DNA of 64,000 nucleotides, taken from assembly GCA_002269645.1 (NCBI GenBank), contig NIVC01001392.1:124001-188000 (forward strand), in the 5' to 3' direction. The position numbers were made by a program, and so were the translations under genes. Origin of the DNA: Macrostomum lignano (Eukaryota). How positions within the stretch are numbered: position 1 is the stretch's first letter; each line of letters begins with the position of its first letter. This document shows positions 3,100-64,000 of the stretch, in pieces. The notes under the pieces are model-generated. The model saw only the letters and a list, made by a program, of their open reading frames with translations, was not told where the DNA came from and made no database searches.

Positions 3100-4227
3100 T
3101 AGTGCAACAGCTGATCTCTGCTAGGCCCCTATCATGGCACTGTATCAAGACACCACCACCGCAGTAGTGATGCCAGATGGATCATTGGACCTATTTAGCA
3201 TGACCTCTGGAGTGCTATAGGGTAACACTTTGGTGCCCTTTCTCTTTGTGCTGGTGATGGACTAGGTGCTTAGGACTAGCCTACCAACAACAGAGGATAG
3301 TTTTCTGCTGCAAAGGCACACCATTAGACGGCACCTAGAGAAAAAACTATCTGTCCTTGGCTATGTGGACAACCTTGCCCTGCTGTCTTCGACAGCCAAA
3401 GGTGCCTAATGGCTGCTGAACAGCCTGACTATGGCGGCAGCAAGGGTCAGTCTTGTCATCAATGCCAAGAAGACCAAGGTGCTGATGGTGCCACATGATC
3501 AACCCGCTGAGATTCAACTTTGAGATGATAACAGCCCTGGGATAGCACTCCCAAAGTGCTTTCAGTTTGTCTACCTTGGAGGACTGGTGCTTGACATCAG
3601 TGAAAACCCAGCAAGATGGCGTGGCAAGGCCTGGGCTGCCTTCTAATCTGTGCAGGCAGTGCTACTTTCTAATGCCCTGTCCAACGGCGCCAGGTCTCAG
3701 CTATTCTAGGCAGTTGTTAAGACTGCCCTGCTGTACAATGCTGAGACTTGGATGCTGACTAGGGCGCTTGAGGCGCAGCTTGATGCAGTCATGCGGAGCA
3801 TGCGGCCCTAGGCCCCTAGTCTGCGCCATTTTTGGCACCCGCCATGGCCTTGGTAGCGAGACAACTAAGTCCCTATATAAGCGCATAGGCCTAAGCCCTA
3901 ATGCGGCCTTTTGCCCCGCTAAGTCAACAGCGCCTGCAGCTTGCCAGACATGTCATTCGGGCCAAAGCCTACTGCCCAGAGCCACTGCAGGACGTCCTGC
4001 TATGGAACCCACAGGGACCACGCAGGCATGGCCAGGGACAATCAGCCCACTATATCAATTGCCTTTTTGAAGATACACGAGCTGCAAGCACCCAGCCAGG
4101 TGGCCGGTGTGAAGTATGTTAGAGACCTAGCTCTGAGAGGCGCGATTTGATGCTCCCCCCTCTTGGCCACTCCTGTGGCTGGTGTGGCCGTGGGGTGTAA
4201 CTAGGCCCTATTATTATTATTATTATT
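3100..4227 (+). mobile_element. 5'-truncated RTE-like non-LTR retrotransposon relic (RT pseudogene), heavily C>T/G>A mutated
   Basis: One frame over ~3149-3790 reads GVL*GNTLVPFLFVLVMD*VLR ... LGYVDNLALLS ... FVYLGGLV ... LLYNAETWMLT, matching RT motifs GVLQGDTLAP, YADD, F.YLG and LLY..ETWTL. Six in-frame stops; (TAT)n tail at 4209-4227. Confidence 0.9.
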
Positions 4228-17400: not shown

Positions 17401-18086
17401 AATACACTATTGTGTTATGAAATTTTCATTTTTACTAAAGAATTTTAGACAAAACTCCTTAAATTACTCAGCATGCTTTTAATTTGGTTCCTTTATTACG
17501 CGCTGCTAATTTACATAATTGTCACTTATTTACAAACTAAGTTATATATGTCAATCAAATGAATCACTTAGTTTCACGAGTACAAAGAAAGCTTTGCAGT
17601 AATTTTGTATCTATGAAGTAACAAAAAAGGTCAGTTAGATTACTTATGACGCCCTTGCCTGCGCGTCCTGAGCAGGTCGCGTGTACTAAATTAGAAAGAC
17701 TGCCCATAAAATTGCTAAAATATTCTAACTATCGCGTCCTCACTGCAGCGGCATGGTTTCGGCGTGAGGTGAAGTGTCCCGAATGCGGCGAGATGACTTT
17801 CTGGGGCGAGTGGCTTTCGCCGAAGGAAGCACAGGACTCGGAGGCCAAGCCCTGTCGAGCCTGTCACGCGGACATTCTGTCATGTCTGTTGGTCCAGCCG
17901 AGGGTCAGCAAGAGAAGCACCAGGCCAACAATACGGAGCGACGTCGCTGTTAAACTGCAGGATTCTCCGGCGCCCGGCGCTGCGGCCGCCAATCCGGCTG
18001 ACGGCGAGGTGAACGAAGCGCTGAACTTCGATGCCAGTCAGAAGCGAGTCGCAACGGAGGGTCGAAAGAGCGTCAGTTTTATGTGA
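14458..18086 (+). CDS. MFHAS1: LRR-ROC-COR (ROCO) protein, MFHAS1/MASL1-like; exons 14458-17293 and 17749-18086 (~1057 aa)
   Basis: Tandem LxxLxLxxN LRRs; ROC G1 GSGGCGKS, G3 WDCSG, G4 GTKAD; COR starting IPALW; no kinase domain. Phase-1 intron CAG|GTAAGT...CTGCAG|CG; C-terminal CPEC and CRAC cysteines. Confidence 0.85.
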
Positions 18087-19234
18087 CTCTCGATTCTGAG
18101 CAGTTCGTGTGCATGTCTGCATCTTGTTTTGAGCTCACTCTCAGCCACAGCAAGTGTGGTATTTTATTTTTCTCTAAATCTAAATTGCCTACATTGACTC
18201 AATAATATTGAAGCTACATACGAGCTATAGCAGGCAATCTGTCAACTAGATCGGTGCGGACTCTTTGTTAGATGTTCGCTACAGATTAAATAGCTACAGA
18301 TAAATTATGACAAAAATCTATAGCTGTGTATTTAAAATTTGTACACTCTTAATGTGCGTCAGATAGAATAGAGTATTTTCGCTTTAGAATGGCAAATGAT
18401 GTATATGTATAGTGTATTCCAATTCTTCTATTTTGCTGTCATTTTTCTATAGATTGACTTGTAAGAATATAATTGATATGAATGGAAGTTTTGTGACGTC
18501 ATGCCACGTGTTTCCAATGTGTATAGACAGGGGGCAACGTGTCACCGTTCCAGCAGGTTCGCGAGATGTGAACTGGACAATGTGGATATTGTCTGGTGTT
18601 GCCCTCACGTCGACGTCATTGGGAGAATAGCTAGTGTGACATAGTCGTTATGATTTTTTAGTTAGACGTACATTACAGATATGTGCAGATATAGCGGTAG
18701 CGATGGCGATCCGGGGACGATAGATTTATGCAGGATACTAGTATAAATAGGATGTACTGTGTACATCTACGGATCGTACGTATTTACGGGTGATCATCCG
18801 TTTGCATGTGAGTGCTGCACTGCATTCTACGATAGATTTATCCACCAGCCATGCTACAGAAAGTAGGATGTACGAATCACTTCGCGGTACATGCACTGTA
18901 CATACTAGACCCGCGGATGATAAGCAGAAGTATGATCGGTGAATACGCGGTCCTGTCAATTTTCTTTTCTACTCTGTATACATGTATATTGAAATTGAAT
19001 AGTAAAATTAATTTAAATCTTGCAGGGTGGAACAGCTATTGTTAATGATACGTACGATGAAGAAACATACGAATTATATTACATTATACGAGCGTAAATA
19101 CAGAAGTCCTTTTAGGCATTAATTTTTTCGAAACAATACTCACTCGCGGATCCGATCTTGTCTAGCATGTTGATCGTAAAGATCCGCTTGAGAACATATG
19201 AGATTTTCTGGTTTTACAACTGCAAAAATAACAA

Positions 19235-20420
19235 GGCACACCGCCGGGGAACAGAGTACAGTTCACAAAGGGCGGCGTGTGCCTGGCCGATCATCCCAGA
19301 GTCATCCAGCAGGCAATCCACGTAGCAGCGCTTCCGGCCGTAGCCTCGGCGCCAGGGGCCCTGCATCGTGAGCAGCAGGACTTCCTGCGCCGGTTGAGGG
19401 CAGGAGTAGGCAGCTCCGCACGGATGGTGTGGCCCGCCAGTTGAAGTCTTCTCCTGGGGAGGGTTTCGCTAGGTGGTCGCAGCCCTGCGCGCTGGTAGAG
19501 GGCTGCGTTGGAGATTGCGTCCGGGTAGCTGATGCTGAAGGCCGGCTCGCAGCAGGGCCGAATGTGCTGCGTCCAGCAACGTCTCCAGAGTCTCGGTCAG
19601 CGTCCACATCTCGACGTTGTAGGTCTCGGCCCTCAAAAGATGTAGCAAGCTGGAAAACTCGGATAGAGCGGGAGGCCACCGAGTCCAGGCCCCTGCGTCG
19701 CGCCAAGTCCTCCTGGACACTGGGCACGAGACCGCCGAGGTACGCGAAGCTCGTGCAGCGAGTTAGAGTTCCTCCGTTTTCTCGATGTCATTGCTTTTCG
19801 CTTTTCATCTCGCTGGCCCGACCGATGCCGCAGCTGCCATTAGGCTGTCTAGCATGCGCTGGGCTCCATCAGCCGTAGAGGCGAGCAGCATAACCCATGA
19901 GCGACAGCCGTGTCTCAGGTTGGCGGCTGCATGCTTGTTCGTCGTCAGAGCAGCAGGAAGCCGTCCTCATCTGTTGGCAGGGCTCTTTGCAGCCCCAAAT
20001 CGAAGCACCAACAGGAAAAGGTAGGGTGCAAGCGTGTCATCTTGCAGCACCCCATAGGTCGTGTTGAACAAGTCACACAGTCCGTCAGGTGTCACCACGG
20101 CGGCCGATCGAGTCTCCTGATAGAGAGCTATTGGTCGCTTTGGCACGTGGTGCGACCGCAAGACCGGTACGAGGAATCGCGAACCACAGAGTCGAATAAG
20201 GCCTTCCTGCTGAAATCTACGAAAATGAAGACAAAGGAGATGGCTTGGTGGGTGCGCGCTTTTTCTATATAATCCGCCTAAAGTCCAGGATTTGCGTCGC
20301 TGTGCCCCAGTGTGGTCGGATGCCGTTCTGCTCCAGCCGGAGAAACGGTTCCAGCACCGGCGGCAGAGCCGCATCAGCAAGATCTTGTTGAAGAAAGATC
20401 AAGCTTCGCGGCGCACGACA
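19235..20420 (-). mobile_element. RTE-like LINE relic (RT fragment), same superfamily as 3100-4227, decayed mainly by indels
   Basis: Fragments EPFLRLEQNGIRP, GVLQDDTLAPYLFLLVL, GYA..LLASTADGAQRML, FAYLGGLVPSVQEDLARRRG and YNVEMWTLT in shifting frames; CpG-rich. Confidence 0.9.
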
Positions 20421-21007: not shown

Positions 21008-22513
21008 TGTAACGAAATGAATTGCCGATACTAACACTTGAACTTTCAGCCGTCGAGAGTGCCAAGTCAGAGCGCGAACTCTTATTAACAATCGATGATT
21101 TATATTTATATTGGTTACTTATCAGTCATTAAAACAAAAGTTTCATTATAAAATTATCTTGCAAAATAACATAAATTACATACAGTAAAAAGTACAGTGA
21201 GATAAATACAATATAAATACTATAATACCAATACAACCTGATAAGAGTAAATACGAAATTATTTACTTTTAAATTACATACGCAGATATGTTACATTATC
21301 CTCCTCTTAGAAAAGACAATGTCCACATTGTCAAAAGTACAATTAACAAAAGAGTAGAATACAAAGTATAGAAAATAACTATTAAATATACAGTACATGC
21401 TAAATTTTGAGCAAAAAAAGATTGAACTCGCATTCCCAACTAGACATCGCAATGAGGTGACAGAACACATTTTAAAACAATGGTCTGGACCAAAAGAGAA
21501 GCTAGTTAACCAACACAAAAACCAGAACCCAACAGGGTTAGCAGAGCCCTGGGTTCTCCCCACCACAACCAGTGCAGAGCACAGCATGAATGAAGCAAAA
21601 AACACTTTTTTAATAAAAGGAATTGCCTGTGCACACTATTGTGATACACTGCCATTGGGTGAAACCTTACAAAACACAGAAGAAAATACAGTACAACATT
21701 GAAAAATTATTTGAAAAGTAAAGTACATCATGGCAATTGCCAAAATACAGTATAAAGTACATATGAAGGAATTACAGTAAGTATATAAATTAACAATTAA
21801 GTACAATTACATTAAAATCAATCAACAAAGCATAGGAATTGGAAAATGCAGCTTCCTGGTTCTGGACTTTAGAACAGCATAATTACAAATTTAAAAACAA
21901 AATTTTGCTCTGAACTGGGTACACATCTACATGTACATTCTACAGCTAGTATTGTATTTGAACATAGAGATGCTTTTAAAAAAACAAATATAATATTCGA
22001 AATCATTCAGCGACTGACAGTATCTGCAGCACCTGTCCTTTGGCAGCATCTTCGGCACCTGTGATTTTGTTGGCCTGGCTCGCGGCTGGCTGACATACTG
22101 GTTGGCGTCGGCTAGCTGGACGCGCGCTGCATGCTGATGTGATTGGCTGCGTTGCTGTACATTTGCGGTCGATCAGAAGATTCAGCGGAGTCCTTCATGG
22201 AATCCGAGTTCTGGTGTGGTCGCCATTGTAAAATAATGAATTGCCGATACTAACACTTGAACTTTCAGCCGTCGAGAGTGCCAAGTCAGAGCGCGAACTC
22301 TTATTAACAATCGATGATTTATATTTATATTGGTTACTTATCAGTCATTAAAACAAAAGTTTCATTATAAAATTATCTTGCAAAATAACATAAATTACAT
22401 ACAGTAAAAATACAGTGAGATAAATACAATATAAATACTATAATACCAATACAACCTGATAAGAGTAAATACGAAATTATTTACTTTTAAATTACATACG
22501 CAGATATGTTACA
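21008..22513 (-). mobile_element. intact non-autonomous LTR retrotransposon (TRIM-like), 1506 bp
   Basis: Near-identical LTRs 21008-21295 and 22227-22513 with TGTAA...TTACA ends; 4-bp TSD GTTG (21004-7 and 22514-7); PBS TGGCGACC 1 nt after the 5' LTR on -; PPT AAGAGGAGGATAA abutting the 3' LTR; no gag/pol ORF. Confidence 0.92.
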
Positions 22514-22653: not shown

Positions 22654-23426
22654 ACACCTTTTTGCGTTCTATTTCGATAAAACTGCATTCAATTTCGGCA
22701 AACTGGCTTTCATTTTCGACATCAGCTACGGCCGCACATCCAAACTGCATTCGAATTCGACAAACTGAGAAACAATTTCGGCAACTCGAGTTTATTTAGA
22801 TAAACTGATATTTATAAACTAAAACGAAGGAATGCCAGACTGTCTATGGAAATAAGCGCATCTAAACCCAAAACAGATTTTCAATTGTGCATGAATACTA
22901 TTGTACATACTGTGCAATTGTTTCTGGCTATGCACTTTGTTCCTTCGTGCGCTATTGCTTGCTGATGAGTGCACAGGTTTTTGCATGTTCAATTACACCT
23001 TAACTAATAACTATATTCCAAGTGCAGTACTTGTTCAGAATTTAAGAAATCCCTCTCTTCTGTTTTTATCCCCTTTTTAGATTGGCGCTATCAAAATTGA
23101 GTGCAGTTTGCCAAAATTGAAAATCAGTTTTGGGTTTAGATGCACTTATTTCTATAGATAGGGCATAGTCTGTGTCTGAGGTGCTGGCTATCAAAATTGA
23201 ATATACTATGCTGAAATTCAATGCAGTTCTCCAAATTTGAATATCAGTTTGTCAAAATAGAAACTCAAGTTGCTGAAATTGAATGCAGTTTGCCGAAATT
23301 GTTTCTTGGTTTGTCAAATTCAAATGCAGTTTGGATATGCAGCCATATTTGATGCCAAAAATGAAAGCCAATTGGCAATTGCTGAAATTGAATGCAATTT
23401 TATTGAAATAGAATGCAAAAAGGTGT
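22654..23426. mobile_element. MITE/foldback element with long (~170-200 bp) terminal inverted repeats and an inner inverted pair
   Basis: Left ACACCTTTTTGCGTTCTATTTCGATAAAACTGCATTC versus right-arm reverse complement ACACCTTTTTGCATTCTATTTCAATAAAATTGCATTC; inner pair ~22840-22887 / 23117-23163; TSD not clean. Confidence 0.85.
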
Positions 23427-24019
23427 AGTAGTAATAAATTTTACAACCCTGCTAGGTCTACTGTAAATATTGTCTTAGGCCTATATTAGGCCTAGTAGGC
23501 CTGTACTAAGCCTTATTAAGCAATGGTGAAGCAATGTCTAGTAAGAATATAAATTGGCCCTAACCCTAGTTTTATAAGGACTAGGCCTATGGTCCAGTCT
23601 TGTTATTGTAATTTAAACCTAATTTTAGGTCTACTGATGCTCAACAAAAGAGTCTAGAGTTAAGCCTAGACTCTAGAGAACATTGTTTTAGATTTCATAT
23701 ATTTAGGCTGGCTGCTGGCTTTATAAAATCATAGGACATAGCTATTAGTATTAGGCCTATATTTTAAATTTTTATTTTAGCTAAATATCATATTACATTT
23801 ACATAGATGATAGTCCTAATGATGTAATGGTCTAAAGTTAATGAATGCGATTGAATTTAAATTTTAATTAAAATTAAAAAAAGAATAGGCATAAGATTTA
23901 AAATTTTAATATTAAATAGGCCCTAACAATTGGCCTATTTTTTGCCATTGGCATTGGATATAATATCAACATAAATTTAATAAAATAATCAACTTATTTT
24001 ATTAACTTAACATTATAGA

Positions 24020-24212
24020 CAGTGGTGCAACCAAAGGGGGGCAGGGGGTGGTTGCCCTCCCTTAGGCAGTTGCCCTCCCTTAGGCTAGAAAAAATCTGAA
24101 ATGGGGCCAAGCAAATTTTCACCAAAATAGAGCCATCTCTTTGCCCCCTCCTCCTGGGTCTTTACCCTCTAGAATTCACCCTCCTCTCAAAACATTTCTA
24201 GTTACACTACTG
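24020..24212. mobile_element. 193-bp hAT-like MITE
   Basis: TIRs CAGTGGTGCAACCA versus (rc) CAGTAGTGTAACTA; 8-bp TSD ATTATAGA / ACTATAGA. Confidence 0.75.
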
Positions 24213-25604
24213 ACTATAGAATCTGTAGTCTATTATATTATTACACTTAAGCCTATACAAGGCCAAATTCTAAAAAATTAAAATAACCTTTATTTTAACT
24301 TTTATCATCCATTTGACATAGGCCTATATAGTATTATAGATTTAAAAAAGTCAATAGGCTTTTTATATAAAGTAGATCCTAGATATAACTTATAAGTCAT
24401 TTTAATAGGCAATTGGTGTATATTTTGATGTCTATTTTAGTATAAATAAAAGACTTTTATATTAAATAGTTTACTAAACACAATTTAGACCCTAAATTTT
24501 GGGTAAGTTGGCGACACACTGCCAGCTAGCCTCAAACTGTTCAATCCACCTGTAAACCATTCATCAATTGATAGCATCGGGAGTTGGGTCCATGAAAGTT
24601 GATTAGGTGTTTGTGAATTTCAGGGCATTTCTGACCAAGGCTTTAAAGTCTAAAAATTGTGTGTCTCTGCCCTTCTGTAGAGTGAATGTTAGGGTCCATG
24701 ACTGGAATAAATCTTGCTGCTGTTTTGCAACTCTGTGCTTGATCAGCTCTACTTGTGGCTTTCTTCTGAGTGAGCATAGAAGCACTATGCTGTGTGTATT
24801 TCTATGGCCAAGGGTCTGCAAACAAATGCATGCTGTTTACAGCAGGAAGCACTTATAAAATTCCGACTTTTGTGGCATGAAAGCTAAAATAAGCCACTAA
24901 CTTTTAAGGCATATGATTTTTTTATCACACATTAATACTTGTTGAAGCAAGCAAAAGTGACACAACTTCTGGAATGCCCCTCATAGTAATCTTCCTAAAA
25001 GAAGCTTAAAAGTAATTGGTAAAAATTTTCTTTTGGTAAACTACAGTTGATACAATTAGTAAAACAAAAACTTTTTATATAAAATATTTACTATTACTAT
25101 ATATAATTAGTGTTAAGCACCAATCTATTAATAAGTGTTAACAAACATTAAGATTCTTTATTAACAATAATTGACTGACTAGGCCTGTTAAGATTGTTTT
25201 TTACTAATAGATTAATTAAATTTCATTTATAATTTTGTGAGTAAACACAAATTTATTAATGTTAATGACTGTGCCAATGAGACCAAAGTTGCAAAGAAAG
25301 AACAAAAAAGCTGGAAAAGAGGTTAAAACATCATAAATTTATTTTAATTTACCCAAATGCCAAATTAATCTCTTTTTATGATGATGATCATACCAATGTA
25401 ACAAGTTTTTACTTATGAATTTTAATGAATTAAAATTATGAACTTTATTGTTTGCTAATGAGTATTGCTTTAATTTGCTTCTTTTCTTTCCTAATCTTTA
25501 AAAACTTTCTCTGTACCTGCTAGTGTTTTGAAACAATTTTATTGTTTATATTTTAATAATGAATTAGCTTTCAAGTTTCAAATAAAAAATCTATTTCTTT
25601 TACT

Positions 25605-26330
25605 TTATGCTTGACTTACTTGACTTAGTTGCAGGGAGGGTGGTCCAAAGATACAGCAGGGGGCAAGTGCCACCTATGCCTTGGGCTGGCAAGCATTGTC
25701 TAGGGATAGGTTGGGTCCAAGCCAAGGAAGTGGAGCTAGTCTCAGTTGAAAGCTGGACAGTAGCAGACAAAGTGCTTATTATCTTCATTCTCGAGGTTAT
25801 AGAAGGTGTAGAGTTCACTCCAGCAGATGCCTTGGAGGAAATGTGGCTAAGGGCTAATGAGCAAGTGTGAACTACCTGTCTTAGTGAGGGAGTCAGCAAG
25901 CTCATTACTTTTGAAACTAGCATGTCCTAAGATCCAAGTGAGCTAGATAGTGTTCCTCCAAGCCAGCTTATTGAGCTGCCCAATACCAGTCATGGACTAT
26001 TTGTGAGTTTGTTGTGGTGTGACACAGGGCCTGCAAGGCATCCTGGCTGTCAGAGTGGAAGAAGATTCTTCTGGCTTTGAAGTCCTTGCAGTAGAGCTCA
26101 GCAGCATAGGAGCTGATGGCAAGGACTTTGTTTTAGAAGACATCAGAAAGTCTACTAGTGTATTGGGTGTGAGTATGTGGCCATTAATAAGGATGCAGAT
26201 TCCAAAGCCAAATGTATTGTCTTTGAAGGATCCATCAGTGAAGCAGTGGACCTCCTGGGGGGCAGCTGTATATATAGATAATTTACAATAGTCTATACTC
26301 GTATCTTTGAGATAGTTATAGCTATAAACT
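25605..26330 (-). mobile_element. 3' end of an RNase H-bearing non-LTR retrotransposon (I/R1/LOA-like), pseudogenised
   Basis: Reads VHCFTDGSFKD..FGFGICI, VF*NKVLAI, FHSDSQDALQAL, I*LTWILGHASFKSNELADSLTKTG (RNase H), then LYTFYNLENEDNKHFVCYCPAF (degraded CCHC knuckle). Confidence 0.85.
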
Positions 26331-26439
26331 AGCAATCTTTGCCCCCCGATGGGGGACATCTGTATAGAATCCTTGTTCTTTACAAATAACAAATAGACAA
26401 CGAAATAAAGCCTTCATAAAAAAAACAACAGACATTCCC

Positions 26440-26870
26440 CCTAAAAACAAAACATCCCAAGACAGCAAGCATCCCCAGAAAGCATTCAAGCATCGATCCC
26501 CAAATAGCAAGCATCCCCCAGACTGCAAGCATCCCCCAGATAGCAGGCATCCCCCGATAGCAAGCAACCCCAGATAGCAAGCAACCCCAGATAACAAGCA
26601 ACCCCAGATAGCAAGCATCCCCCAGATAGCAAGCATCCCCCAGATAGCAAGCATCCCTCAGATAACAAGCAACCCCAGATAGCAAGCATCCCCCAGATAG
26701 CAAGCATCCCCCAGATAGCAAGCATCCCCCAGACCGCAAGCAACCCCAGATAGCAAGCATAACCTGGATACAAAGAGACCTTATAGATATCTAGCAACCC
26801 CCTCTCAGATAGCAAGTACCCTCCACCCCCAAGAGCAAGCATCTCCCAATAGCAGGTTACCCCAGTAGCA
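26440..26870. repeat. ~18-bp minisatellite (CAGATAGCAAGCATCCCC)
   Basis: Direct reading. Confidence 0.9.
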
Positions 26871-27441
26871 AACTGTCATGGAATATTATTATACTTGCTA
26901 GATTGTCCTTTGTACTTGAAAATTCGGATTAACACAAATGACACTTTTAAAAGGCAATTAAGAAAATCACATAGCCCTAAAACTTTGTCTATGCACATTT
27001 TTCACTAGCCTAAGATGCTAGTTGAGTTTAGTTGGCTCCTAAATGGATTATTACTGCGCTAGTTTGATTTGGTATTCATACTTTTTATCTAAGATATTTT
27101 TTATATTGTTCAAACAAATGCTAAAGTAGTTAAAGTTTAAATGATTACCATTTCATTGAAGTGTGACTCTTCTTTATGCAACCTAGCTTTCTCCTAAAGT
27201 TCTTCAAGTTGAATCTTAATTTTTTAATTTGTACCAGACAACACATAGATGCTTTCATGAGAACCCAACTGCTCTTTACTTCCTACCTACCAGAGAATCC
27301 CACAATGTCTCTACTGAAAATTCCCTAAAACTAAAACTACTAAAAGTAGTGTAGAAGCAAATCTGCGCGAAGCATGCATATCAGTGCCGGTTAGCAACAA
27401 TACTTGCCCAAATCTAGCCAAAGCCAATTGCAATATTTCAG

Positions 27442-29640
27442 GCCAGTAAGGCCAAGTGCAGCGGGCCAGCTGCCTCCGTGCAGCCCCCGTCTCCATCTCA
27501 GCAGAGCCTGCAGATGCCTCTTGGCCCAGCAGACCTCATCTCCCCCTGTCACTACACTGGCGGCCTGTCAGCTCGCGAGCTTGGCGCCATAGACGATTTA
27601 GCCAATTGCATGGTTGTCGACTCCCTGTTGGGCATTGTCAGCCACAAAATGGCCGAAAGATTTCGTCAGCCATCGGCCTCGCATATTCGGCGATGGCGGG
27701 CTGCTGTTGAAGACTTCGTGGTTGATCAGGTAAAGCTCATGCTGATTGCTCAACTCAGTGTACAAAAGGTAACTATACTACCCTACATCAGTGTACAAAG
27801 GGCAGCTGTACTACCCTACCCTATAGATCAGAGTACCAGGCACTCGCCACTCTCCCTACAAACCCGCAGGACTACGCAGTCGCCTATGCCCGTCTAGTCG
27901 CCCGACCGCCGGATTCCAGCGAATCCGGGCGGCCATTCCTAACCGAGGCGCGTCGCAACGATCCCAGCTTGCGGCTGCACCTGTACCGCTACCTGCACCT
28001 GTTCGACAGGCGCTCCGGCGTGCGAATCGAACTGTGCCGCCGGTACGCGCACGAGAACCGGACTGGAGCCAGGATTGTGTCGACTAGAGACTGGGAGGCC
28101 AACGAGAAAATTGACATGCTTATTGGTAGGTTGCTGTTTGTATTGGCTGTGTAGCATCTGTGTTAATTGTCAGTAGTTAGGTGGCTGTTAGCAGTCAGGG
28201 GGTTGTCATTCAGCTGTCAGGGGGCTGTCAGTCAGCAGTCAGGGGGTTGTCAATCAGCTGTCAGGGGGCTGTCAGTCGGCAGTCAGGGGGCTGTCATTCA
28301 GCAATCAGGGGGCTGTCAGTCAGCAGTCAGGAGGCTGTCAGTCAGCAGTCAGGGGGCTGTCAAGTCAGAAGTCAGGAGGCTGTCAAGTCAGAAGTCAGGA
28401 GGCTGTCATTCAGCAATCAGGGGGCTGTCAGTCGGCAGTCAGGGGGCTGTCATTCAGCAATCAGGGGGCTGTCAGTCAGCAGTCAGGAGGCTGTCAGTCA
28501 GCAGTCAGGGGGCTGTCAAGTCAGAAGTCAGGGGGTTGTCAGTCAGCAGTCAGGGGGTTGTCATTCAGCTGTCAGGGGGCTGTCAGTCAGCAGTCAGGAG
28601 GCTGTCATTCAGCAGTCAGCTGTCAGTCAGCAGTCAGGAGGCTGTCAGTCAGCAGTCAGGAGGCTGTCAGGTTCCGTTAGTCAGCAGTCAGGGCTATCAG
28701 GATTCAACTCGCAGTCATTAGTCAAAAGCCGCGCCCCCCCCCGTGCAGGCTGCATCGCGGAGATGACGCCAGACGAGGAGCGCAGCTATCTCAGACCGGG
28801 CCACAACGATTTCTCAGTGATGTACTCAACCAGGAAGCACTGCTCGCAGCTGTGGCTGGGCCCGGCCGCCTATATTAATCACGACTGTCGGCCCAATGTG
28901 AGATTCGTCCCAACCGGTCCACACTCCGCTTACTATCAGGTGAGCTGGAAACTGAATTATTTGTTGAAAATCAAAATTTGCATGTTACTACTCGTGTCGT
29001 GTAAGTAGTGCAAGCTGGCTACTTATTTATTCATTTTCCCCAGGTGATCCGGCCGATACGCAAGGGCGACGAAATTTTATTATTCTACGGCGCCCACTTT
29101 TTCGGCAAGTCCAACTGCGAGTGCGAATGCGAGACCTGCGAGCGACGGCTTGCTGGCGCCTTCGCCCAGCAGCAGCCGGGCGGCTCTGGCGACGACAGCA
29201 ATGGCTATCGGTTCCGGGACACCGACAAACGGCTGCGACGCCTGGCCGCTGCCGCGTCTAAACGGCAACGCGAAGAAGATGAGGCGGCGGAGCCTGTGGC
29301 AGCGGCGCCGTCAACAGACAAGGCGGAGACAAGCCGGCAGGCTCAGCAACAGCAGCAGCAGCCGCCTTTGAAGCTGCCACGTCTGCTAATTCGAATCAGG
29401 CAGCTGGGCGATCCGCTGCGATACGAGCTGGTAAGTCTGGCCTCTGCAACTTCTGCTCTGGCCTCCGAGTCCGCCTCCGAGGAGTCCGAGTCCTCCCCGG
29501 CCTCTGCGCCCGCCTCTGCCGCGTCCACCGCAACCGCTGCTGGCCCCGCCTCTGCCGCGGACGCCAGCGACGGCCGCAGCTCGTCCACTCCGGCCTCGTC
29601 AATTGACTGCAGCTCCCCGGCCAATCGCAGCCCGGCCTGA
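27442..29640 (+). CDS. SUV420H1: histone H4K20 methyltransferase Suv4-20/KMT5B-C; exons 27442-27729, 27870-28125, 28749-28939, 29044-29640
   Basis: [26 protein letters not shown]; [15 protein letters not shown]; [31 protein letters not shown]; [18 protein letters not shown] (post-SET). All introns GT-AG and phase-consistent (0,1,0). Start is ATG 27514 or an unseen upstream exon. Confidence 0.95.
28167..28700. repeat. ~22-bp minisatellite (GTCAGTCAGCAGTCAGGGGGCT) in Suv4-20 intron
   Basis: Direct reading. Confidence 0.9.
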
Positions 29641-31464: not shown

Positions 31465-32437
31465 TGACGCGCCGAAAAGATGATGCAGTGAGGCGCCGAA
31501 AAAAGTATACAGTGAGGCGCCGAAAAGATGATGCAGTGAGGTGCCAAAAAATTATACAGTGAGGCGCCAAAAAGATGATACAATGAGGCGCCAGAAATAT
31601 GATTCAGGGAGGCGCCAGAAATATGATGCAGTGAGGCGCCAGAAGAGTGATGCAGTGAGGCGCCAGAAGAGTGATACAGTGAGGCGCCAGAAAGATGATG
31701 CAGTTAGGCGCCAGAAATATGATGCAGTGAGGCGCCAGAAATATGATGCAGTGAGGCGCCAGAAATATGATTCAGGGAGGCGCCTGAAAGATGATGCAGT
31801 CAGGCGCCAGAAGAGTGATGCAGTGAGGCGCCAGAAGAGTGATGCAGTGAGGCGCCAGAAAGATGATGCAGTCAGGCGCCAATAAAAGTGATGCAGTGAG
31901 GTACCAGAAATATGATGCAGTGAGGCGCCAGAGAGATGATGCAGTGAGGCGCCATAAATATGATGCAGTGAGGCGCCAGAAATATGATGCAGTGAGGCGC
32001 CAGAAATATGATGCAGTGAGGCGCCAGAAATATGATTCAGGGAGGCGCCTGAAGGATGATGCAGTCAGGCGCCAGAAGAGTGATGCAGTGAGGCGCCAGA
32101 AGAGTGATGCAGTGAAGCGCCAGAAAGATAATGCAGTGAGGCGCCAGATGAGTGATGCAGTCAGGCGCCAATAAAAGTGATGCAGTGAGGTACCAGAAAT
32201 ATGATGCAGTGAGGCGCCAGAGAGATGATGCAGTGAGGCGCCGAAAATATGATGCAGTGGGGCGCCAGAAAGATGATGCAGTGAGGCGCCAGAGAGATGA
32301 TGCAGTGAGGCGCCGAAAATATGATGCAGTGGGGCGCCGAAAATATGATGCAGTAGGGCGCCGAAAATATGATGCAGTGAGGCGCCGAAAATATGATGCA
32401 GTGGGGCGCCGAAAATATGATGCAGTGGGGCGCCGAA
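31465..32437. repeat. 24-bp minisatellite (TGATGCAGTGAGGCGCCAGAAATA), ~40 copies
   Basis: Direct reading. Confidence 0.95.
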
Positions 32438-48085: not shown

Positions 48086-48431
48086 TCCAAAGAGTCAAAT
48101 TCAAAGCAGACCGGCTCCCAATAGCAACGCTGCAAACTCCAGGATATACCTGGGCAGGCATTCACAGGAGCCACTGCTCCCAAGCGTACAATTTAACCAA
48201 CTCAATTAAATCCGCGCACTCATTTCAAGGTATTCTAAGTTTAGAACTAGAGGGTCATAAATTTGACTTGTCTGAATAAGACGTCAGCTTTGGCCTCTGC
48301 GTTGCGGCCCAGGTGAAAGGTCGCTAAAAAATCTTTACCTGCAAATAAGTTTACACTTTACACATCATTTGTATATTTAACTGATTGGCATGATTAGGGA
48401 GCAATCTGCAGCCTCCATGCTATAATCACTA

Positions 48432-58515: not shown

Positions 58516-60848
58516 TAAAACAGTAAAAATCTCTATCCTAAGAGTCATGATCACCACAATCCCCATTCCATCGGTTCGATACGCCCAAAGTTTTATAGTG
58601 TCCGATGTGTTAAATAATAACAGTTTTCTTGAATCTTCAATGATGACATTTTCATGTCTTATACGTACAACTTTGGTGAATTACGAAGAAAGCATCCATT
58701 CGATCCTTGCTCAAAATCAAATAAGAAAAAGGGAAGCGTATGACAAAGATCGTACCAAGGACCCCTGTAGTACATTTATAACAAACTAAACGTACAGTTT
58801 ATACCTCTACAGTGGTCCTTGGATCGCTCAGCCAGGGATGATAAGCAGGGTCCATGAGAATTGCCAGCAGAATTGCCCGCATTGCCCGCCGAGCTTCCGA
58901 CGCAGTGCATGCTTTTGCGACGCGTTTTGCCCCCAATGCTTACGCTAAGGAGAGATACAGGGGTAATAAAATTACAGGGGTATTATACAGAGATTTATAA
59001 GCAGTCTTAATAAAGAGATTTAGGAGATAATGCATATGCATGAATTATAACAGCTCACCGATGTAACCCCCTACATGCGTATAGAAAATGCACAAAATGG
59101 GGATGAAAATGTAGCAAAATGCGCTGTTGGAAAAAAAGCATTGTGGGGCAAACCTCGGCGGGAAAAATCTGCAGGAAATTCGTTCGCGGGTAGTTCACTC
59201 GCGGGCAAATTGCAGTGTGGGAAAATTTCGGAGAGCAGTTCTCGGCGGTCGCTCGTCGGGCAATTTTCACTCACGGGCAAAATATACACGCACTGCATGC
59301 GGGCAAATCTCGACGGGAAAATCTCGGTGGGAAATTCATCTGTGAGCGATTCTCGTGCTCCCGATAACCAATATTTTATTATGTTGTCCACATGAAGACA
59401 TGCAGACATTTACGGAGTTAATTTATTCGAAAAAAACGCTTTGGCTATGCTAAAACAAATAATTCCAAGCAGCATATGTGATGCGGCAAGGAATTAGTGT
59501 ATAATTAAATTTTATAATACTTTTTAAGGTTCTTAATTATTATTGGGTGTTATTAGATGCGTTAATTTTTTACTTACAGTGCTTTTAAATTTAGAATATT
59601 TCTTTGCAAAATCTTGTAAAGTTTGTTTAAGAAGTCCCTTCCCTCGTGCCTCGTATACTTGAGACTGCAGATGGAGAGCCATCTTATGGAGGAGATGGAG
59701 AGCCATCTTATGGAGAGCCAGATGGACATCTTAGTAGGCTAAATATAACATAAGAATAAGATTACTCCGTTTGTTAGTAACACTGTAGTAATTTTACAAA
59801 AATTTTAAGAACTCAAGTAAAGACGTAAAGTTGTATTTTTAGTTTCTGAAAATTTTCAGACATGCTTTCTTTAAAAGGTGTTAATCTGATGCAATGCCAA
59901 AGTTATTTTGGTCGATCCATTTTTACCGATCTGTTGATCTAGACCGTGTGATATCTATGAGTATGTTAAAACTTAAAAGCTAGGATATTGAACATGTACG
60001 GTGTGTACCATGTATCATTTTGATATTTTCAATAATTTTTTATAATCATTAACTTTACACTTTCACTTTCAGATAACTGCAGCTTCGAATGGGAAGTTTA
60101 ACAGCTTTGCAGTAGAGGATGGGTCTAAATTTTCTTATTTCTATTATTAAAACTGATGGTGATGCTTCCAGTTTCTAAAAATGACATGACAATGCCAATG
60201 GCATAAAATGTCTTGAATGACTTTTATCAGAACTATCCTATAACAATCAATGTTTTCAACCATTATAAACTTGATGTGAAAATATAAGAATGCAACATAA
60301 AAAGTATTTTCTTTAACTAAAATATGAAAAAGAAAATTTTTTGAAAATACCATTTTACCAAGACATTTGACTTTGTGATTTATTCATAACTTGAACTTTT
60401 TCATGTTCAAAGGATTTAAAATTTTATAAAACTTGCTTTAGGCCTATATATTATTAAATTAGATCATTTTTTGTCATTTTGTAGCCCCCCTATAGGCCTA
60501 GTAGGGAGGCCTTGGTATTTATTTGATTTAGGCCTATTATTTCTCATTTCTAGTTTATTAATCTGCTACCAATTTGTTAATTAAATAGACAAAAAGCCTT
60601 TTCTTAGTAAGCCTATTGTAATATTTTCACAAATTCATTTTTGAGGGCTTTTTTATTTTGAAGACATCAGGCTATATATATTTTTATTAATTTCTAAACT
60701 GGTAATAAAATGTTTTTACTAGGGCCTACCTGATGGCAATTTAGGCTACTTTGTTAAAATGCCACACTTAGAGACATGGCAACTGTGTCTATAATGCAGA
60801 AACTTATAGACTCAGTGGCCGTGTCAATGAAACTTGCATGGCAGCCAT

Positions 60849-60955
60849 GTTGTTAATATTGAATGGGTTCACACTTAGAGACATGGTGGGTGGCCCTGTC
60901 ATTAATATTGAATGGGTTCACACTTAGAGACATGGTAGGTGGCCCTGTCTCTAAT
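60849..60955. repeat. ~46-bp tandem duplication
   Basis: TAATATTGAATGGGTTCACACTTAGAGACATGGT repeated. Confidence 0.8.
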
Positions 60956-60985
60956 ATTGGAGATTATAGGCATGGCTACCATCGC

Positions 60986-61556
60986 CATGTATACCAGTGT
61001 ATGGATCATGTACCCGTGTATGCCAGAAAAAATTCAGGTGTCAAGGACTTTGTATGCTAGTGTACACCAAAAACAAAAAGTTGCACTAAAATGTACACCA
61101 AAAATTCTTAAAAAAGGGCATTCAGTTTTCACAAGTAGAGTTTTCTAAGAAAGGCTTTCATATGAAAAGTGTTTTTAAGATATTATGAATATTTTCAATT
61201 TAAACAAACTTAAATTATACCTACAAAAAATATGATGCAAAATTAATACTCTTAGCAAAAATTTACACTAATTTTATTTATTATTAATTTAAAAGAAGCA
61301 AAAAGTTTATCACTGACAATATAAATTTTCCTTTACTTTACATAAAAACATTAAATTACATTACAATTTTCATGCACAGCATGAATTTATTCACCAAAAT
61401 TTATACGCCAAAAAAGTATGCATGGCTGTGTTACTTGTGTATGCCAATAGTGTACGCCAACAAAGTGCGCCAAGGGTTGTGTACATCGATTGTGTACGCC
61501 AAGGACTTAGGGTGGCCGTTTTGTACGCCAGAAAAGTTCTGGCATACATGCATACC
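60986..61556. mobile_element. degenerate MITE-like element with short terminal inverted repeat and sub-terminal TGTACGCCA motifs
   Basis: TGTATGCCAGAA (61017) inverted against TTCTGGCATACA (~61538); motif clusters at both ends around an AT-rich core. Confidence 0.45.
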
Positions 61557-61859
61557 ATCTGCAACCTGGCATGTATATAATCATCAATCAGATGAAAAGA
61601 TTGATTGATTGAAAAGTCTGAGTTTTTTATTTTAGTTTTTAAAAAAATTAAATTAAATTAATTCTTAAGAGTGCCGCCACAAATATATATGTAGCTACTG
61701 GAAAGAAATAATTTTTCGATACATATTTGTTGCACTTTAAGATTTAGTGTTACTCTTATTAATAAATTTAATTTAATTTATTTTATTTTTTTAAACTTAA
61801 AAAGTTCAAGATAGAAAATTTTCTGTTTGCTAAAAAAATTCAAATTAAAAAAAACTTCA

Positions 61860-61927
61860 ACCACTTGGGATTCAAACCTAGCTACTTGCAATCACAAGGC
61901 AATCAACATACTCACTAAGCCACCACT
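61860..61927 (-). mobile_element. eroded tRNA-derived SINE head
   Basis: Reverse complement GTGGTGGCTTAGTGAGTA...GGTTTGAATCCCAAG, i.e. A-box and B-box with C>T/G>A changes. Confidence 0.5.
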
Positions 61928-63215
61928 TGCTTATAAAAGGGCCCTACAGAACATGCATTTTATATTAATGATTATAGCCATGCCTATAAGCTCAAATATT
62001 ATAGACACAGCCACTGTGTCTATAGGTAGGCCTACTCTGTTGTTAAAATCATATTTTTTCTAGTTTTTTTAAATTTTAAATATTTTCTATTTTGCAATTT
62101 TATTATTTTCAAAAGCCAATTTTTTAAAAAGAAAAATGGCAGAAGAGATATGAAAAGTCTTTTTCATCATATTACAAATAAAATATACATTATTGCATTT
62201 AATTTGCATGATTGTATATTTTAGTCAATAAGAATGTCACAAATTTTTTTAATCACTTGACTAATACAAGCACATATAGTGTATAATATAAGCTATCTCT
62301 AGGCTTTGCCATCATTTTAGATATGATACAATTGCCAAGCCTACTTTCCCTATCTTCTTTCTACATATTTGTTACTTTAACTTTGTTATTTTTCATACCT
62401 TTTTTGAATTTTCCAAAACATTATAATGCTTTGCAGAAAATAAAACTTTTGTGATTTACTAAAACATTACTTTGCTAAAATATCCTATAGCCAATAAGAT
62501 AAAAGCTAAGGGCCTACCAATTATTATCTGTCTATAAACTATAGTAGGAATAAATATAACTAAAGTTTAAATTTAAGAGAATAGAAATGAAAAGAATGTC
62601 TAAATATTATTTTTATATTGTTTTTCTTTTAGATTATAGAGAACAAGGCTTCTTTTGACTAGACTTGCTTATGCTATAATTGAAATAAGGTAAAAAGGAT
62701 AATTACTGGGTTCCTTAGCTTTATATCAGTTTATCAATAGAGAAACTTTATTAGAAAATTTTTGTCTATCTAGCAGATATTAGGGATTATAAATGTTTAT
62801 AGGTTATGCCAATACTATTATATCTATTATATTAAAAGCTTTAAAAATAAATAGAAATACTAATTTATAGTTATTAGCTATGAAATAAAGAACCCTGTTT
62901 AAATGTGATTATTACAGATAATATCTAGCATAGTTAAAGGGAGTTTGTAAAGTATATTATACTGCTAGCCTACTTTTAAACCAAACTCAAAGCCAAGTAT
63001 TACTTAAAACTGACATAGGCATAGAATAGCATATATTATTATAGTTGCTACTGCAATGCTAATGGCTATACCAAGTCAAGGGTGAACAAATTATTGCACT
63101 AATAAAAATGGTATAGCCATAAGTGTGGCAATAATAAACATAAATTAAAATAACTCATGGATCGCAGCAATCTGCAATTCGCCATTGGCTAGCAGACTAA
63201 TTGGAATCCAATGCA

Positions 63216-63988
63216 ATGAGTTTTAGCAGTGATGAAGTCAACTTTCTCGTGTTTAGATATCTGCAGGAGTCAGGTAGGCATTTCATGCAACTTGTTACAT
63301 ATTACTAAGAAGTCTTCATTAAACGAAACGTTTTCTTGAAATTCTGTTACAATTTCTATCAAACTCGTGCACCGCAGGCTACCTGCACTCTGCCTACCTA
63401 TTCGGTGTCGAGAGCCACATCTCCAGCACGAACATCAACGGCTCCATGGTGCCGCCGGCCGCTCTGTTGCAGATCATCCAGAAGGGCCTGCAGTACACCG
63501 AGGCCGAAATCAGCATAGGCGATGGCGGCTCAGAGAGAGTGGTGGAGTCCCTGTCCCTAATCGACTCGGTGATGCCAGAGGTTGTTGACATGCGCAAAAA
63601 GCAGGTCGCCGAAGCTGAGCGAAATCGACGAGGCGGAGGCCGAATGAAACCTGAGGCGCATAACGGCGGCGAAGATGACCATAGCAACCATCACCAGGCC
63701 GTTGCTATGGACGCGGAGAGCAGCGGAGGCGGCGGTGGTGGAGGCTACTTCCCAGCCAACAGGGTGACGGTGCTGCGCGGTCACGAGTCCGAGGTGTTCA
63801 TCTGCGCTTGGAATCCCAAGACCGACTTGCTGGCCTCGGGATCCGGAGATTCAACGGCCCGAATCTGGGACGCCACGGACCCGGCCTCGGCCGGCGAGGC
63901 CAAGAAGCAGCTGGTGCTGAAGCATTGCATTAGTAAAGGCGGCCTCGATGTGCCTAGCAACAAGGATGTCACTTCTCTGGATTGGAAT
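63216..63988 (+). CDS. TBL1XR1: TBL1X/TBL1XR1 (ebi) LisH-WD40 corepressor subunit, 5' partial; exons 63216-63273 and 63378-63988
   Basis: MSFSSDEVNFLVFRYLQESG|YLHSAYLFGVESH (LisH) ... LRGHESEVFICAWNP..DLLASGSGDSTARIW ... SNKDVTSLDWN|GTGAGT; continues beyond the window. Confidence 0.97.
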
Positions 63989-64000
63989 GTGAGTCGTTTG

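What the first reader, a model, noticed from the sequence alone, without database searches (positions are those of the whole stretch)
22900..27300. Candidate RIP-like / methylation-driven genome-defence system: islands of near-pure C>T erosion of repeats in an animal genome
Seen in sequence: three AT-rich islands (~3.1-4.5, ~22.9-27.3, ~60.1-63.2 kb). In them, every recognisable repeat (LINE RT, MITE arm, hAT MITE, RNase H LINE, SINE) differs from its expected consensus or partner almost only by C>T/G>A. The contexts are CpG but also CpA/TpG (CAG>TAG, TGG>TAG, TGC>TAC). Neighbouring genes and some repeats stay CpG-rich. Established: repeat-induced point mutation (CpA>TpA) is a fungal process; CpG decay from 5mC is common, but strong non-CpG decay of repeats is not a standard feature of animal genomes. 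Inference: a regional, repeat-targeted cytosine methylation/deamination process with sharp boundaries.
Basis: partly seen in the sequence, partly recalled or inferred. Interest (0 to 1): 0.85.

Follow-up and report, generated by a model that had tools for sequence, protein, structure and literature searches.

The report
Methylation-type CpG decay blocks in a flatworm
This stretch of the Macrostomum lignano (flatworm) genome contains sharply bounded blocks of intergenic repeat DNA that have lost about 90% of their CpG sites, which is the ordinary footprint of cytosine methylation rather than a fungal RIP-like defence, with only a weak hint of extra decay at CAG/CTG sites.

Summary
The window comes from the flatworm Macrostomum lignano. 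Two of the three claimed islands are real. Block 22951-27365 has 15 CpG against 141 expected (o/e 0.11). Block 60087-63162 has 12 against 62. Flanks and all seven gene bodies checked sit at o/e 0.7-1.1, the edges are under 150 bp wide, and windowed CpG o/e is bimodal. The claimed island at 3.1-4.5 kb is not AT-rich and is only moderately depleted.

RIP indices are negative: product about 1.0, substrate 1.35-1.48, composite below 0, against 1.6, 0.2-0.3 and 1.3 in fungal RIP regions. In polarised comparisons of an RTE LINE copy, C>T is specifically raised at CpG (0.37 against 0.11 per site, p=1e-7). The five control branches, including a decayed CpG-rich copy in the same window, show no such rise. 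C>T makes up about half of all changes, so the erosion is not "near-pure". A paired MITE has one arm outside and one inside the block, and only the inside arm lost its CpGs (9 of 10).

The best reading is regional germline CpG methylation followed by 5mC deamination. Reviews report that the species keeps DNMT1 and DNMT3. The target here is intergenic repeat blocks, not gene bodies. An island-specific excess of C>T at CAG/CTG (interaction p=0.015 to 0.002) is suggestive but unproven.

The parts
22951..27365 (.). Main CpG-depleted, AT-rich block (the 'island' of the finding). GC 0.36, CpG o/e 0.11.
   Evidence: 15 CpG observed against 141.4 expected, P=6e-42. CpG positions are listed.
22654..22889 (.). 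Outer arm of a long inverted repeat (MITE-like). It lies outside the block and is CpG-rich (o/e 1.50).
   Evidence: Inverted repeats I1-I3, alignment, composition.
23112..23426 (.). Inner arm of the same inverted repeat. It lies inside the block. Nine of 10 CpGs have become TpG or CpA (o/e 0.12).
   Evidence: One search counts 9 CpG C>T, 7 non-CpG C>T, 2 reverse transitions and 4 transversions in 185 aligned bp.
25600..26300 (-). Decayed 3' fragment of a non-LTR retrotransposon with an RNase H domain, many stop codons and two frameshifts. CpG o/e 0.03 at GC 0.46.
   Evidence: Six-frame translation. Pfam RNase_H PF00075, E=1.7e-6, 28.7 bits. Composition.
26453..26760 (.). 18-bp minisatellite inside the block. 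Its consensus unit has no CpG, so it says nothing about decay.
   Evidence: TRF.
27366..29640 (+). CpG-rich 5' flank and first exons of a KMT5B/SUV420H-like H4K20 methyltransferase gene (first in-frame ATG at 27514). Its start marks the right edge of the block.
   Evidence: ORFs. Pfam SET domain. PDB KMT5B match at E=1.6e-42. CpG o/e 0.71-1.05 in exons and intron.
60087..63162 (.). Second CpG-depleted, AT-rich block. GC 0.285, CpG o/e 0.19. It contains a small cluster of retained CpGs at 61406-61717.
63216..64000 (+). 5' end of a TBL1-like gene (LisH motif MSFSSDEVNFLVFRYLQESG). It starts 54 bp after the right edge of the second block.
   Evidence: Sequence. Pfam LisH PF08513, E=6e-6. CpG o/e 0.93.
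3126..4182 (+). GC 0.54, CpG o/e 0.34. This copy was used for the polarised substitution spectrum.
   Evidence: Pfam RVT_1. BLAST and MAFFT against L001-L004. Spectra.
19200..20330 (-). Decayed, frameshifted copy of the same LINE superfamily that remains CpG-rich (o/e 0.90). It serves as the internal control.
   Evidence: Translation. Alignment. The branch spectrum is flat, with CpG C>T at 6/66.
21296..21998 (.). Small CpG-poor block of about 0.7 kb, bracketed by 288-bp direct repeats that are 98.6% identical (21008-21295 and 22227-22513).

Best explanation
The blocks are stretches of intergenic, repeat-derived DNA that have been CpG-methylated in the germ line or stem-cell lineage of Macrostomum lignano for a long time. 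The flanking genes, their introns and some neighbouring dead repeats have not been methylated. 5-methylcytosine deaminates to thymine, so methylated CpGs decay to TpG and CpA several times faster than other cytosines. Over time this removes about 90% of CpGs and lowers GC content by a few percent. Ordinary AT-biased neutral drift explains most of the remaining AT-richness.

SHOWN: the CpG-specific deficit, its sharp edges, its continuity across unrelated elements, a CpG-specific excess of C>T on the lineage of a copy lying in a CpG-depleted stretch (the 3.1-4.2 kb one), and its absence in control lineages.

FROM THE LITERATURE: the species retains DNMT1 and DNMT3 and has low overall 5mC.

INFERRED: that methylation is the cause, that it is or was germ-line methylation, and that the right-hand edges are set by protection of active gene 5' ends.

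The target differs from the canonical invertebrate pattern. Here gene bodies look unmethylated and intergenic repeat blocks look methylated.
For: Organism: the 996-aa ROCO ORF is 100% identical to M. lignano A0A1I8IKK2.

CpG deficit: o/e is 0.11 and 0.19 in the two blocks against 0.76-1.08 in flanks. The distribution is bimodal. Seven gene bodies and two introns sit at 0.71-1.19.

Polarised spectrum of the RTE copy, with ancestral states from four metagenome relatives plus the second window copy: C>T is 50/134 at CpG, 11/57 at CpA, 12/100 at CpC and 8/73 at CpT, and T>C is 13/160. CpG against CpC+CpT gives OR 4.6, p=1e-7. The five control branches give OR 0.4-1.5.

No strand bias: sense-strand C>T and G>A rates are similar, at 33/79 against 25/76 at CpG and 25/149 against 32/168 elsewhere. 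This is as expected for deamination of double-stranded genomic DNA.

MITE pair: both arms belong to one inverted repeat, and only the arm inside the block lost CpGs (9 of 10).

Age alone does not explain the pattern. The CpG-rich RTE copy is at least as broken by frameshifts and deletions, yet shows no CpG hypermutability.

GC balance: CpG-normal non-coding flanks have GC 0.385. Losing one G or C per CpG predicts about 0.35, and the block has 0.344-0.358 (my arithmetic).

Literature: DNMT1 and DNMT3 are conserved and 5mC is low in M. lignano (PMC11292947; PMC9246332; PMC10658182).
Against: No methylation data were available, so methylation is inferred only from its mutational footprint.

The CpA/TpG excess in the blocks is small (o/e 1.14 against 1.07-1.16 in flanks). 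The decay must therefore be old and relaxed towards equilibrium, or part of the sequence arrived already CpG-poor.

The polarised spectrum comes from the weaker block at 3.1-4.2 kb, not from 22.9-27.3 kb. For the main block only the 185-bp MITE pair is available, and it cannot be rooted.

The outgroup copies come from unknown organisms in metagenomes. Alignments are at 50-70% identity and parsimony ignores multiple hits.

Overall 5mC in this species is reported as low, so the process could be historical rather than ongoing.

The AT-core (GC 0.23-0.31) and the second block (0.285) are more AT-rich than CpG loss alone predicts.
Confidence: 0.75

Rival explanations
1. Age mosaic. An ancestor methylated most of its genome. 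Methylation was later largely lost. The blocks are simply the oldest non-coding DNA, and the CpG-rich sequence around them is younger (recent transposon insertions, duplications) or under selection.
For: Overall 5mC in M. lignano is reported as low. The blocks contain heavily decayed elements. The CpA/TpG excess is small, as expected for very old decay. The small CpG-poor block at 21296-21998 sits between 98.6%-identical direct repeats, so at least some boundaries are junctions between sequences of different origin.
Against: A frameshifted, deletion-ridden RTE copy at 19200-20330 keeps CpG o/e 0.90 and shows no CpG hypermutability on its branch (6/66). Introns of KMT5B and TBL1-like are CpG-normal. 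The two arms of one inverted repeat differ in CpG fate.
Confidence: 0.12
2. RIP-like or deaminase-driven genome defence. An enzyme recognises repeats and converts C to T in CpA and other non-CpG contexts, as in fungal RIP or APOBEC-type editing.
For: C>T is the commonest change. There is an island-specific excess at CAG/CTG, with interaction OR 2.9, p=0.015, rising to OR 3.5, p=0.002 when the MITE is added. TpC sites are hit more often than other non-CpG sites on the island branch (OR 3.2, p=0.009).
Against: The RIP product index is 1.01-1.03 and the substrate index 1.35-1.48, so the composite is negative. Fungal RIP regions give 1.6, 0.2-0.3 and +1.3 (PMC7882544). TpA is not enriched and CpA/TpG are not depleted. 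Only one member of each repeat pair is affected. The TpC bias also appears on control branches L001 (OR 5.4) and L004 (OR 2.6), so it is not island-specific. There is no strand asymmetry. C>T at non-CpG, non-CWG sites is no higher than in controls (0.121 against 0.114).
Confidence: 0.03
3. Inherited composition. The blocks are made of elements that were already CpG-poor and AT-rich when they inserted, for example families that spent their history methylated or that came from another genome. No in-situ regional process is then needed.
For: Some boundaries coincide with repeat junctions. The CpA/TpG excess is modest. The octamer TAGGCCTA is shared by the AT-rich parts of the two main blocks, with the core AGGCCT also in the 3-4.5 kb stretch. 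This suggests common sequence families.
Against: The depletion runs without a break over a MITE arm, unclassified AT-rich DNA, a LINE fragment at GC 0.46, a minisatellite flank and unique sequence, and it ends at gene 5' ends. The outer and inner arms of one inverted repeat differ. Sub-repeats in the second block exist as TGTACGCCA, TGTATGCCA and TGTACACCA side by side, which indicates decay in place.
Confidence: 0.06
4. The pattern reflects a regional difference in fixation bias or repair rather than methylation. For example, the blocks could be recombination-poor heterochromatin lacking GC-biased gene conversion.
For: The blocks are more AT-rich than CpG loss alone predicts. Non-CpG C>T slightly exceeds T>C on the island branch (0.135 against 0.081, OR 1.8, p=0.11).
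Against: A fixation bias acts on all G/C sites. The observed excess is about 4-fold and specific to CpG, with other contexts at control level.
Confidence: 0.04

Closest known systems
Mosaic DNA methylation of invertebrate genomes, with its bimodal CpG o/e footprint (for example Ciona, sea urchin, oyster, annelids)
   Same: CpG o/e is bimodal, with sharply bounded CpG-poor domains next to CpG-normal domains. C>T hypermutability is CpG-specific. The DNMT1 and DNMT3 toolkit is reported for the species.
   Different: In the canonical pattern the methylated, CpG-poor compartment is the bodies of constitutively expressed genes (PMC11292947). Here all seven gene bodies in the window are CpG-normal, and the depleted compartment is intergenic repeat DNA abutting gene 5' ends.
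Transposon- or heterochromatin-directed CpG methylation with CpG decay (vertebrates, some invertebrates, plants)
   Same: Dead transposon fragments and other non-coding DNA are CpG-depleted. Gene 5' ends are spared. The CpG o/e of 0.1-0.2 is as low as or lower than in vertebrate bulk DNA (my knowledge for the vertebrate value).
   Different: The effect is not genome-wide. A dead LINE copy 3 kb away is untouched, so targeting is regional and patchy. No methylation map exists to confirm it.
Fungal repeat-induced point mutation (RIP)
   Same: Both produce AT-rich blocks with sharp edges, made of repeats, in which C>T is the commonest change.
   Different: The context is CpG rather than CpA. The RIP indices are negative. 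Only one copy of each repeat pair is hit. The organism is an animal.
Non-CpG (CpA, especially CAG) methylation by DNMT3 enzymes in mammalian germ cells and stem cells
   Same: It is a minor non-CpG component that accompanies dense CpG methylation. CpA is the next-best DNMT3 substrate after CpG, and a DNMT3B-CAG complex structure exists (PMC7335073). Non-CpG methylation accumulates in male germ cells and oocytes (PMC3553940, PMC3630097).
   Different: Here the excess is equal at CAG and CTG (8/39 each), meaning both strands of CWG. Mammalian non-CpG methylation is described as asymmetric (title of PMC3553940). The statistical support is weak.

Membership tests
Fungal RIP | Dinucleotide signature: TpA enriched and CpA/TpG depleted (high product index, low substrate index, positive composite index) | tested here: not met
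   Blocks give product 1.01-1.03, substrate 1.35-1.48 and composite about -0.3 to -0.5. Fungal RIP regions give 1.6, 0.2-0.3 and 1.3 (PMC7882544).
Fungal RIP | Both copies of a duplicated sequence are mutated | tested here: not met
   Only the inner MITE arm and only one of the two RTE copies are affected.
Fungal RIP | A RID/DIM-2-type cytosine methyltransferase homologue acting in a fungal sexual cycle | not testable with these tools
   The organism is a flatworm.
5mC-driven CpG decay in a mosaically methylated animal genome | Strong CpG deficit with bimodal CpG o/e along the genome | tested here: met
   Blocks have o/e 0.11 and 0.19 against 0.76-1.08 in flanks. The histogram is bimodal.
5mC-driven CpG decay in a mosaically methylated animal genome | C>T substitutions are elevated specifically at CpG on the lineage of the depleted copy, on both strands | tested here: met
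   Rates are 0.37 at CpG against 0.11-0.19 elsewhere, OR 4.6, p=1e-7. Controls are flat. There is no strand bias. This was tested on the copy at 3126-4182. For the main block only the unrooted MITE pair is available.
5mC-driven CpG decay in a mosaically methylated animal genome | The organism has maintenance and de novo DNA methyltransferases (DNMT1, DNMT3) | not tested
   Taken from the literature only: PMC11292947 and PMC9246332.
5mC-driven CpG decay in a mosaically methylated animal genome | Residual CpGs in the depleted domains are actually methylated in the germ line | not testable with these tools
   No methylome data were accessible. The primary paper with bisulfite data (Wasik 2015) is not held.
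Canonical invertebrate gene-body methylation | The CpG-poor compartment corresponds to transcribed gene bodies | tested here: not met
   The ROCO, death-domain, KMT5B, glutamine-synthetase-like, ORF493 and TBL1-like genes have o/e 0.71-1.08. The depleted blocks are intergenic.
AID/APOBEC-type editing | A 5'-TpC (or WRC) preference specific to the edited copies, and strand asymmetry | tested here: not met
   The TpC bias is also present on control branches L001 and L004. C>T and G>A occur at equal rates on the sense strand.
Non-CpG (CWG/CpA) cytosine methylation | C>T is elevated at CAG/CTG relative to other non-CpG sites, and only in the depleted blocks | tested here: inconclusive
   RTE island branch: 16/78 against 18/149 (p=0.12). 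Controls: 32/410 against 101/883. Interaction p=0.015. MITE: 5/14 against 2/38 (p=0.011, chosen post hoc). Combined interaction p=0.002. CAG/CTG trinucleotides are not depleted in the blocks.

The most novel reading that the evidence does not exclude
Macrostomum lignano directs germ-line cytosine methylation to discrete intergenic repeat blocks that run right up to gene 5' ends, and not to gene bodies. There it methylates both strands of CWG (CAG/CTG) as well as CpG, leaving a double CpG plus CWG decay footprint. That would be a plant- or fungus-style, transposon-directed methylation system with a symmetric non-CpG component in a bilaterian animal, from a phylum usually treated as methylation-poor.
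Probability: 0.18. Interest if true: 0.6.

Novelty: new member of a known kind. Interest (0 to 1): 0.35.

Why it matters
Flatworms are usually cited as animals that have lost or nearly lost DNA methylation. [quoted passage not shown] This window shows from sequence alone that M. lignano carries a strong, sharply compartmentalised footprint of CpG methylation. In these 64 kb the footprint lies on intergenic repeat blocks rather than on gene bodies. If that holds genome-wide, this experimentally tractable species (transgenesis is available for it) would be a good place to study how transposon-directed methylation is targeted and bounded in an invertebrate. The CAG/CTG hint is cheap to test genome-wide. 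The finding does not reveal a new kind of genome defence.

Tried and rejected
(1) RIP. The indices were computed per kb and per block and are negative.

(2) APOBEC-like editing. A TpC preference appeared on the island branch but also on two control branches, and there is no strand bias. Rejected.

(3) A general CpA effect. CpA against CpC+CpT gives OR 1.8, p=0.18 under strict context. Not significant.

(4) A general non-CpG C>T excess. The rate is 0.135 against T>C 0.081 (p=0.11). Non-CpG, non-CWG C>T equals the control level.

(5) Relatives of the RNase H LINE fragment in the main block. The protein search returned nothing, so that fragment could not be polarised.

(6) Other genomic copies of the locus or of the MITE. 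The exact-protein look-up for the ROCO ORF found nothing on record. A metagenome scan with the MITE sub-repeat pattern gave 0 hits. Self-BLAST of the window found no further dispersed pairs.

(7) Trinucleotide composition as a test of CWG decay. CAG/CTG is not depleted in the blocks (1.09 against 1.08). This is uninformative, because CpG decay of CGG/CCG replenishes CAG/CTG.

(8) 'hAT' and 'SINE' identities. There is no Pfam or tRNA support.

(9) The primary paper with bisulfite data for this species is not in the held library.

(10) A pure age explanation is weakened by the decayed but CpG-rich RTE copy.

Full report
ORIGIN OF THE WINDOW. The 996-aa ROCO-type ORF at 14458-17448 is 100% identical to UniRef A0A1I8IKK2 of Macrostomum lignano, a free-living flatworm. 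The window also carries a death-domain gene, a KMT5B/SUV420H-like SET-domain gene (PDB KMT5B match, E=1.6e-42), a glutamine-synthetase-like gene and a TBL1-like gene with a LisH motif. Many minisatellites are present.

THE OBSERVATION. Per-kb profiles and CpG position lists show two strong CpG-depleted, AT-rich blocks. Block 22951-27365 has GC 0.36 and 15 CpG against 141 expected (o/e 0.11, P=6e-42). Block 60087-63162 has GC 0.285 and 12 CpG against 62 expected (o/e 0.19). Flanks are at 0.76-1.08. With tandem arrays masked, CpG o/e in 400-bp windows is bimodal: 34 of 193 windows fall below 0.3, the main mode is 0.6-1.1, and there is a trough near 0.4. The edges are narrower than about 150 bp. 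The third claimed island (3.1-4.5 kb) is not AT-rich (GC 0.48-0.52) and is only moderately depleted (o/e 0.33). A small extra CpG-poor block lies at 21296-21998. All seven gene bodies and two introns tested are CpG-normal (0.71-1.19). The right edges of both strong blocks lie just upstream of + strand genes: 148 bp before the first in-frame ATG of KMT5B (27514), and 54 bp before the ATG of the TBL1-like gene (63216).

IS IT RIP-LIKE? No. TpA/ApT is 1.01-1.03 and (CpA+TpG)/(ApC+GpT) is 1.35-1.48 in the blocks, which gives a negative composite index. Fungal RIP regions have product 1.6, substrate 0.2-0.3 and composite 1.3 (PMC7882544). Symmetrised dinucleotide odds ratios show only CpG strongly depleted. 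CpA/TpG are slightly in excess (1.14) and TpA is not enriched (0.92).

SUBSTITUTION SPECTRA. Two natural experiments were available.

(a) The MITE pair. A long inverted repeat straddles the left edge of the main block. Its outer arm (22654-22889) is CpG-rich, with o/e 1.50. Its inner arm (23112-23426) is inside the block, with o/e 0.12. Over 185 ungapped bp there are 22 differences: 9 CpG>TpG/CpA (9 of 10 CpGs), 7 non-CpG sites with C outside and T inside, 2 in the reverse direction, and 4 transversions. One of the 7 non-CpG sites is best read as an ancestral CpG hit on both arms.

(b) The RTE LINE copies. An RTE-type LINE reverse-transcriptase copy sits at 3126-4182 (o/e 0.34). A second, frameshifted and deletion-ridden copy of the same superfamily at 19200-20330 is CpG-rich (o/e 0.90). 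A protein search and a metagenome scan recovered four related DNA copies, L001-L004, with GC 0.55-0.65 and CpG o/e 0.85-1.04. Parsimony polarisation on a MAFFT alignment, requiring confirmed ancestral neighbours, gives these rates for the depleted copy:
- C>T at CpG: 50/134 (0.37)
- C>T at CpA: 11/57 (0.19)
- C>T at CpC: 12/100 (0.12)
- C>T at CpT: 8/73 (0.11)
- T>C: 13/160 (0.08)

CpG against CpC+CpT gives OR 4.6, p=1e-7. Of the C>T changes, 62% are at CpG. C>T makes up 81 of 139 changes, or 168 of 326 with more sites. All five control branches, including the CpG-rich window copy (CpG 6/66), show no CpG effect. Sense-strand C>T and G>A rates are equal. The erosion is therefore CpG-centred and symmetric between strands, but it is not near-pure.

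NON-CpG COMPONENT. CpA as a class is not significantly elevated (p=0.18). Non-CpG C>T against T>C gives OR 1.8 (p=0.11), which is compatible with ordinary AT-biased drift. A TpC preference on the island branch (OR 3.2) also appears on control branches L001 and L004, so it is not island-specific.

I noticed that four to five of the non-CpG events in the MITE were at CAG/CTG, so I tested CWG. In the MITE it is 5/14 against 2/38 for other non-CpG sites (p=0.011, post hoc). On the RTE island branch it is 16/78 against 18/149 (p=0.12), with CAG and CTG at 8/39 each. In pooled controls it is 32/410 against 101/883, so CWG is lower than the rest there. The island-by-CWG interaction is p=0.015 for RTE alone and p=0.002 with the MITE added. 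C>T at non-CpG, non-CWG sites is at control level (0.121 against 0.114). CAG/CTG is not depleted in block composition, but CpG decay of CGG/CCG replenishes it.

MECHANISM. The most economical explanation is long-standing germ-line or stem-cell CpG methylation of these blocks, followed by 5mC deamination. Reviews report that M. lignano has conserved DNMT1 and DNMT3 and low overall 5mC (PMC11292947, PMC9246332, PMC10658182). [quoted passage not shown] Low global 5mC fits methylation confined to a CpG-poor minority compartment. The GC balance fits as well. CpG-normal non-coding flanks have GC 0.385. Loss of one G or C per CpG predicts about 0.35, and the block has 0.344-0.358 (my arithmetic). The AT-core and the second block are lower still, which implies extra AT drift or an AT-rich starting composition. 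Age alone does not explain the mosaic, because a thoroughly decayed LINE copy and introns remain CpG-normal. Inherited composition alone is unlikely, because the depletion runs unbroken across unrelated elements, ends at gene 5' ends, and splits one inverted repeat. Sub-repeats in the second block also occur as TGTACGCCA, TGTATGCCA and TGTACACCA side by side.

COMPARISON WITH KNOWN SYSTEMS. This is the classical footprint of mosaic methylation. One departure is worth noting. In the canonical invertebrate pattern the methylated compartment is gene bodies (PMC11292947). In this window gene bodies look unmethylated, and intergenic repeat blocks look methylated right up to gene starts. It is not a member of the RIP family, because three defining features were tested and not met. 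The possible CWG component resembles DNMT3 side-activity on CpA/CAG, which is known from mammalian germ and stem cells (PMC7335073, PMC3553940, PMC3630097). It differs in appearing symmetric.

LIMITS. No methylome, no other copy of the locus and no family consensus from the genome itself could be reached. The main block is polarised only through a 185-bp pair. The outgroups come from unknown organisms at 50-70% identity. One 64-kb window cannot establish a genome-wide rule.

VERDICT. The feature is real and strongly supported, and it is an ordinary kind of thing found in a less-studied phylum. The RIP-like reading is rejected. The methylation-decay reading is supported with confidence of about 0.75. 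A small CAG/CTG signal remains open.

Noticed in passing
AGGCCT at 3627, 3887, 4414, 22639, 23477, 23488, 23497, 23583, 23753, 24320, 25181, 60440, 60494, 60507, 60530, 62028: The palindromic octamer TAGGCCTA (core AGGCCT) is concentrated in the CpG-poor regions. Sixteen of the 20 AGGCCT sites in the window lie in or at the edge of them. TAGGCCTA occurs 5 times against 0.10-0.23 expected in the main block, and 4 times against 0.06-0.27 in the second (Markov order 1 and 2). Its meaning is unknown. It could be the terminus of a small element family, or a motif whose cytosines sit in slowly decaying contexts.
   Followed up: partly
window 21008-21295 and 22227-22513: Two 288-bp direct repeats, 98.6% identical, bracket a 0.7-kb CpG-poor segment followed by a 0.23-kb CpG-rich segment. 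This may be an LTR-like or duplicated element. It shows that some CpG boundaries are junctions between sequences of different origin.
   Followed up: partly
window 60990-61100 and 61400-61530: Degenerate sub-repeats of a unit like TGTACGCCA(A/G) occur inside the second block in three forms: intact (CG), TG and CA. Nine retained CpGs cluster at 61406-61717, inside an otherwise CpG-free 3 kb. This could be a younger insertion or a locally protected patch.
   Followed up: no
window 38311-46479; also 1-2476, 7480-8885, 31465-32440, 47097-48086, 51751-52408 and others: Tandem arrays occupy a large share of the window. They include an 8.2-kb array of a 24-bp unit with higher-order structure and no CpG at all. 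They create false CpG-free stretches and must be masked in any CpG o/e scan.
   Followed up: partly
window 27478-29640 (+): The gene immediately right of the main block encodes a KMT5B/SUV420H-type H4K20 methyltransferase. The position is probably coincidental.
   Followed up: no
L001 (1338 bp), L002 (890 bp), L003 (1332 bp), L004 (1210 bp): Short environmental metagenome contigs (JGI and ENA) carry GC-rich (0.55-0.65), CpG-normal relatives of the window's RTE-type LINE, some with open reading frames. The source organisms are unknown, possibly meiofaunal flatworms in the samples.
   Followed up: partly
window 11888-12679 (-) and 14458-17448 (+): Long single-exon ORFs encode a death-domain protein that looks MyD88-like by eye (only the death domain has Pfam support) and a 996-aa LRR-Roc-COR protein. 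Both are CpG-normal.
   Followed up: no
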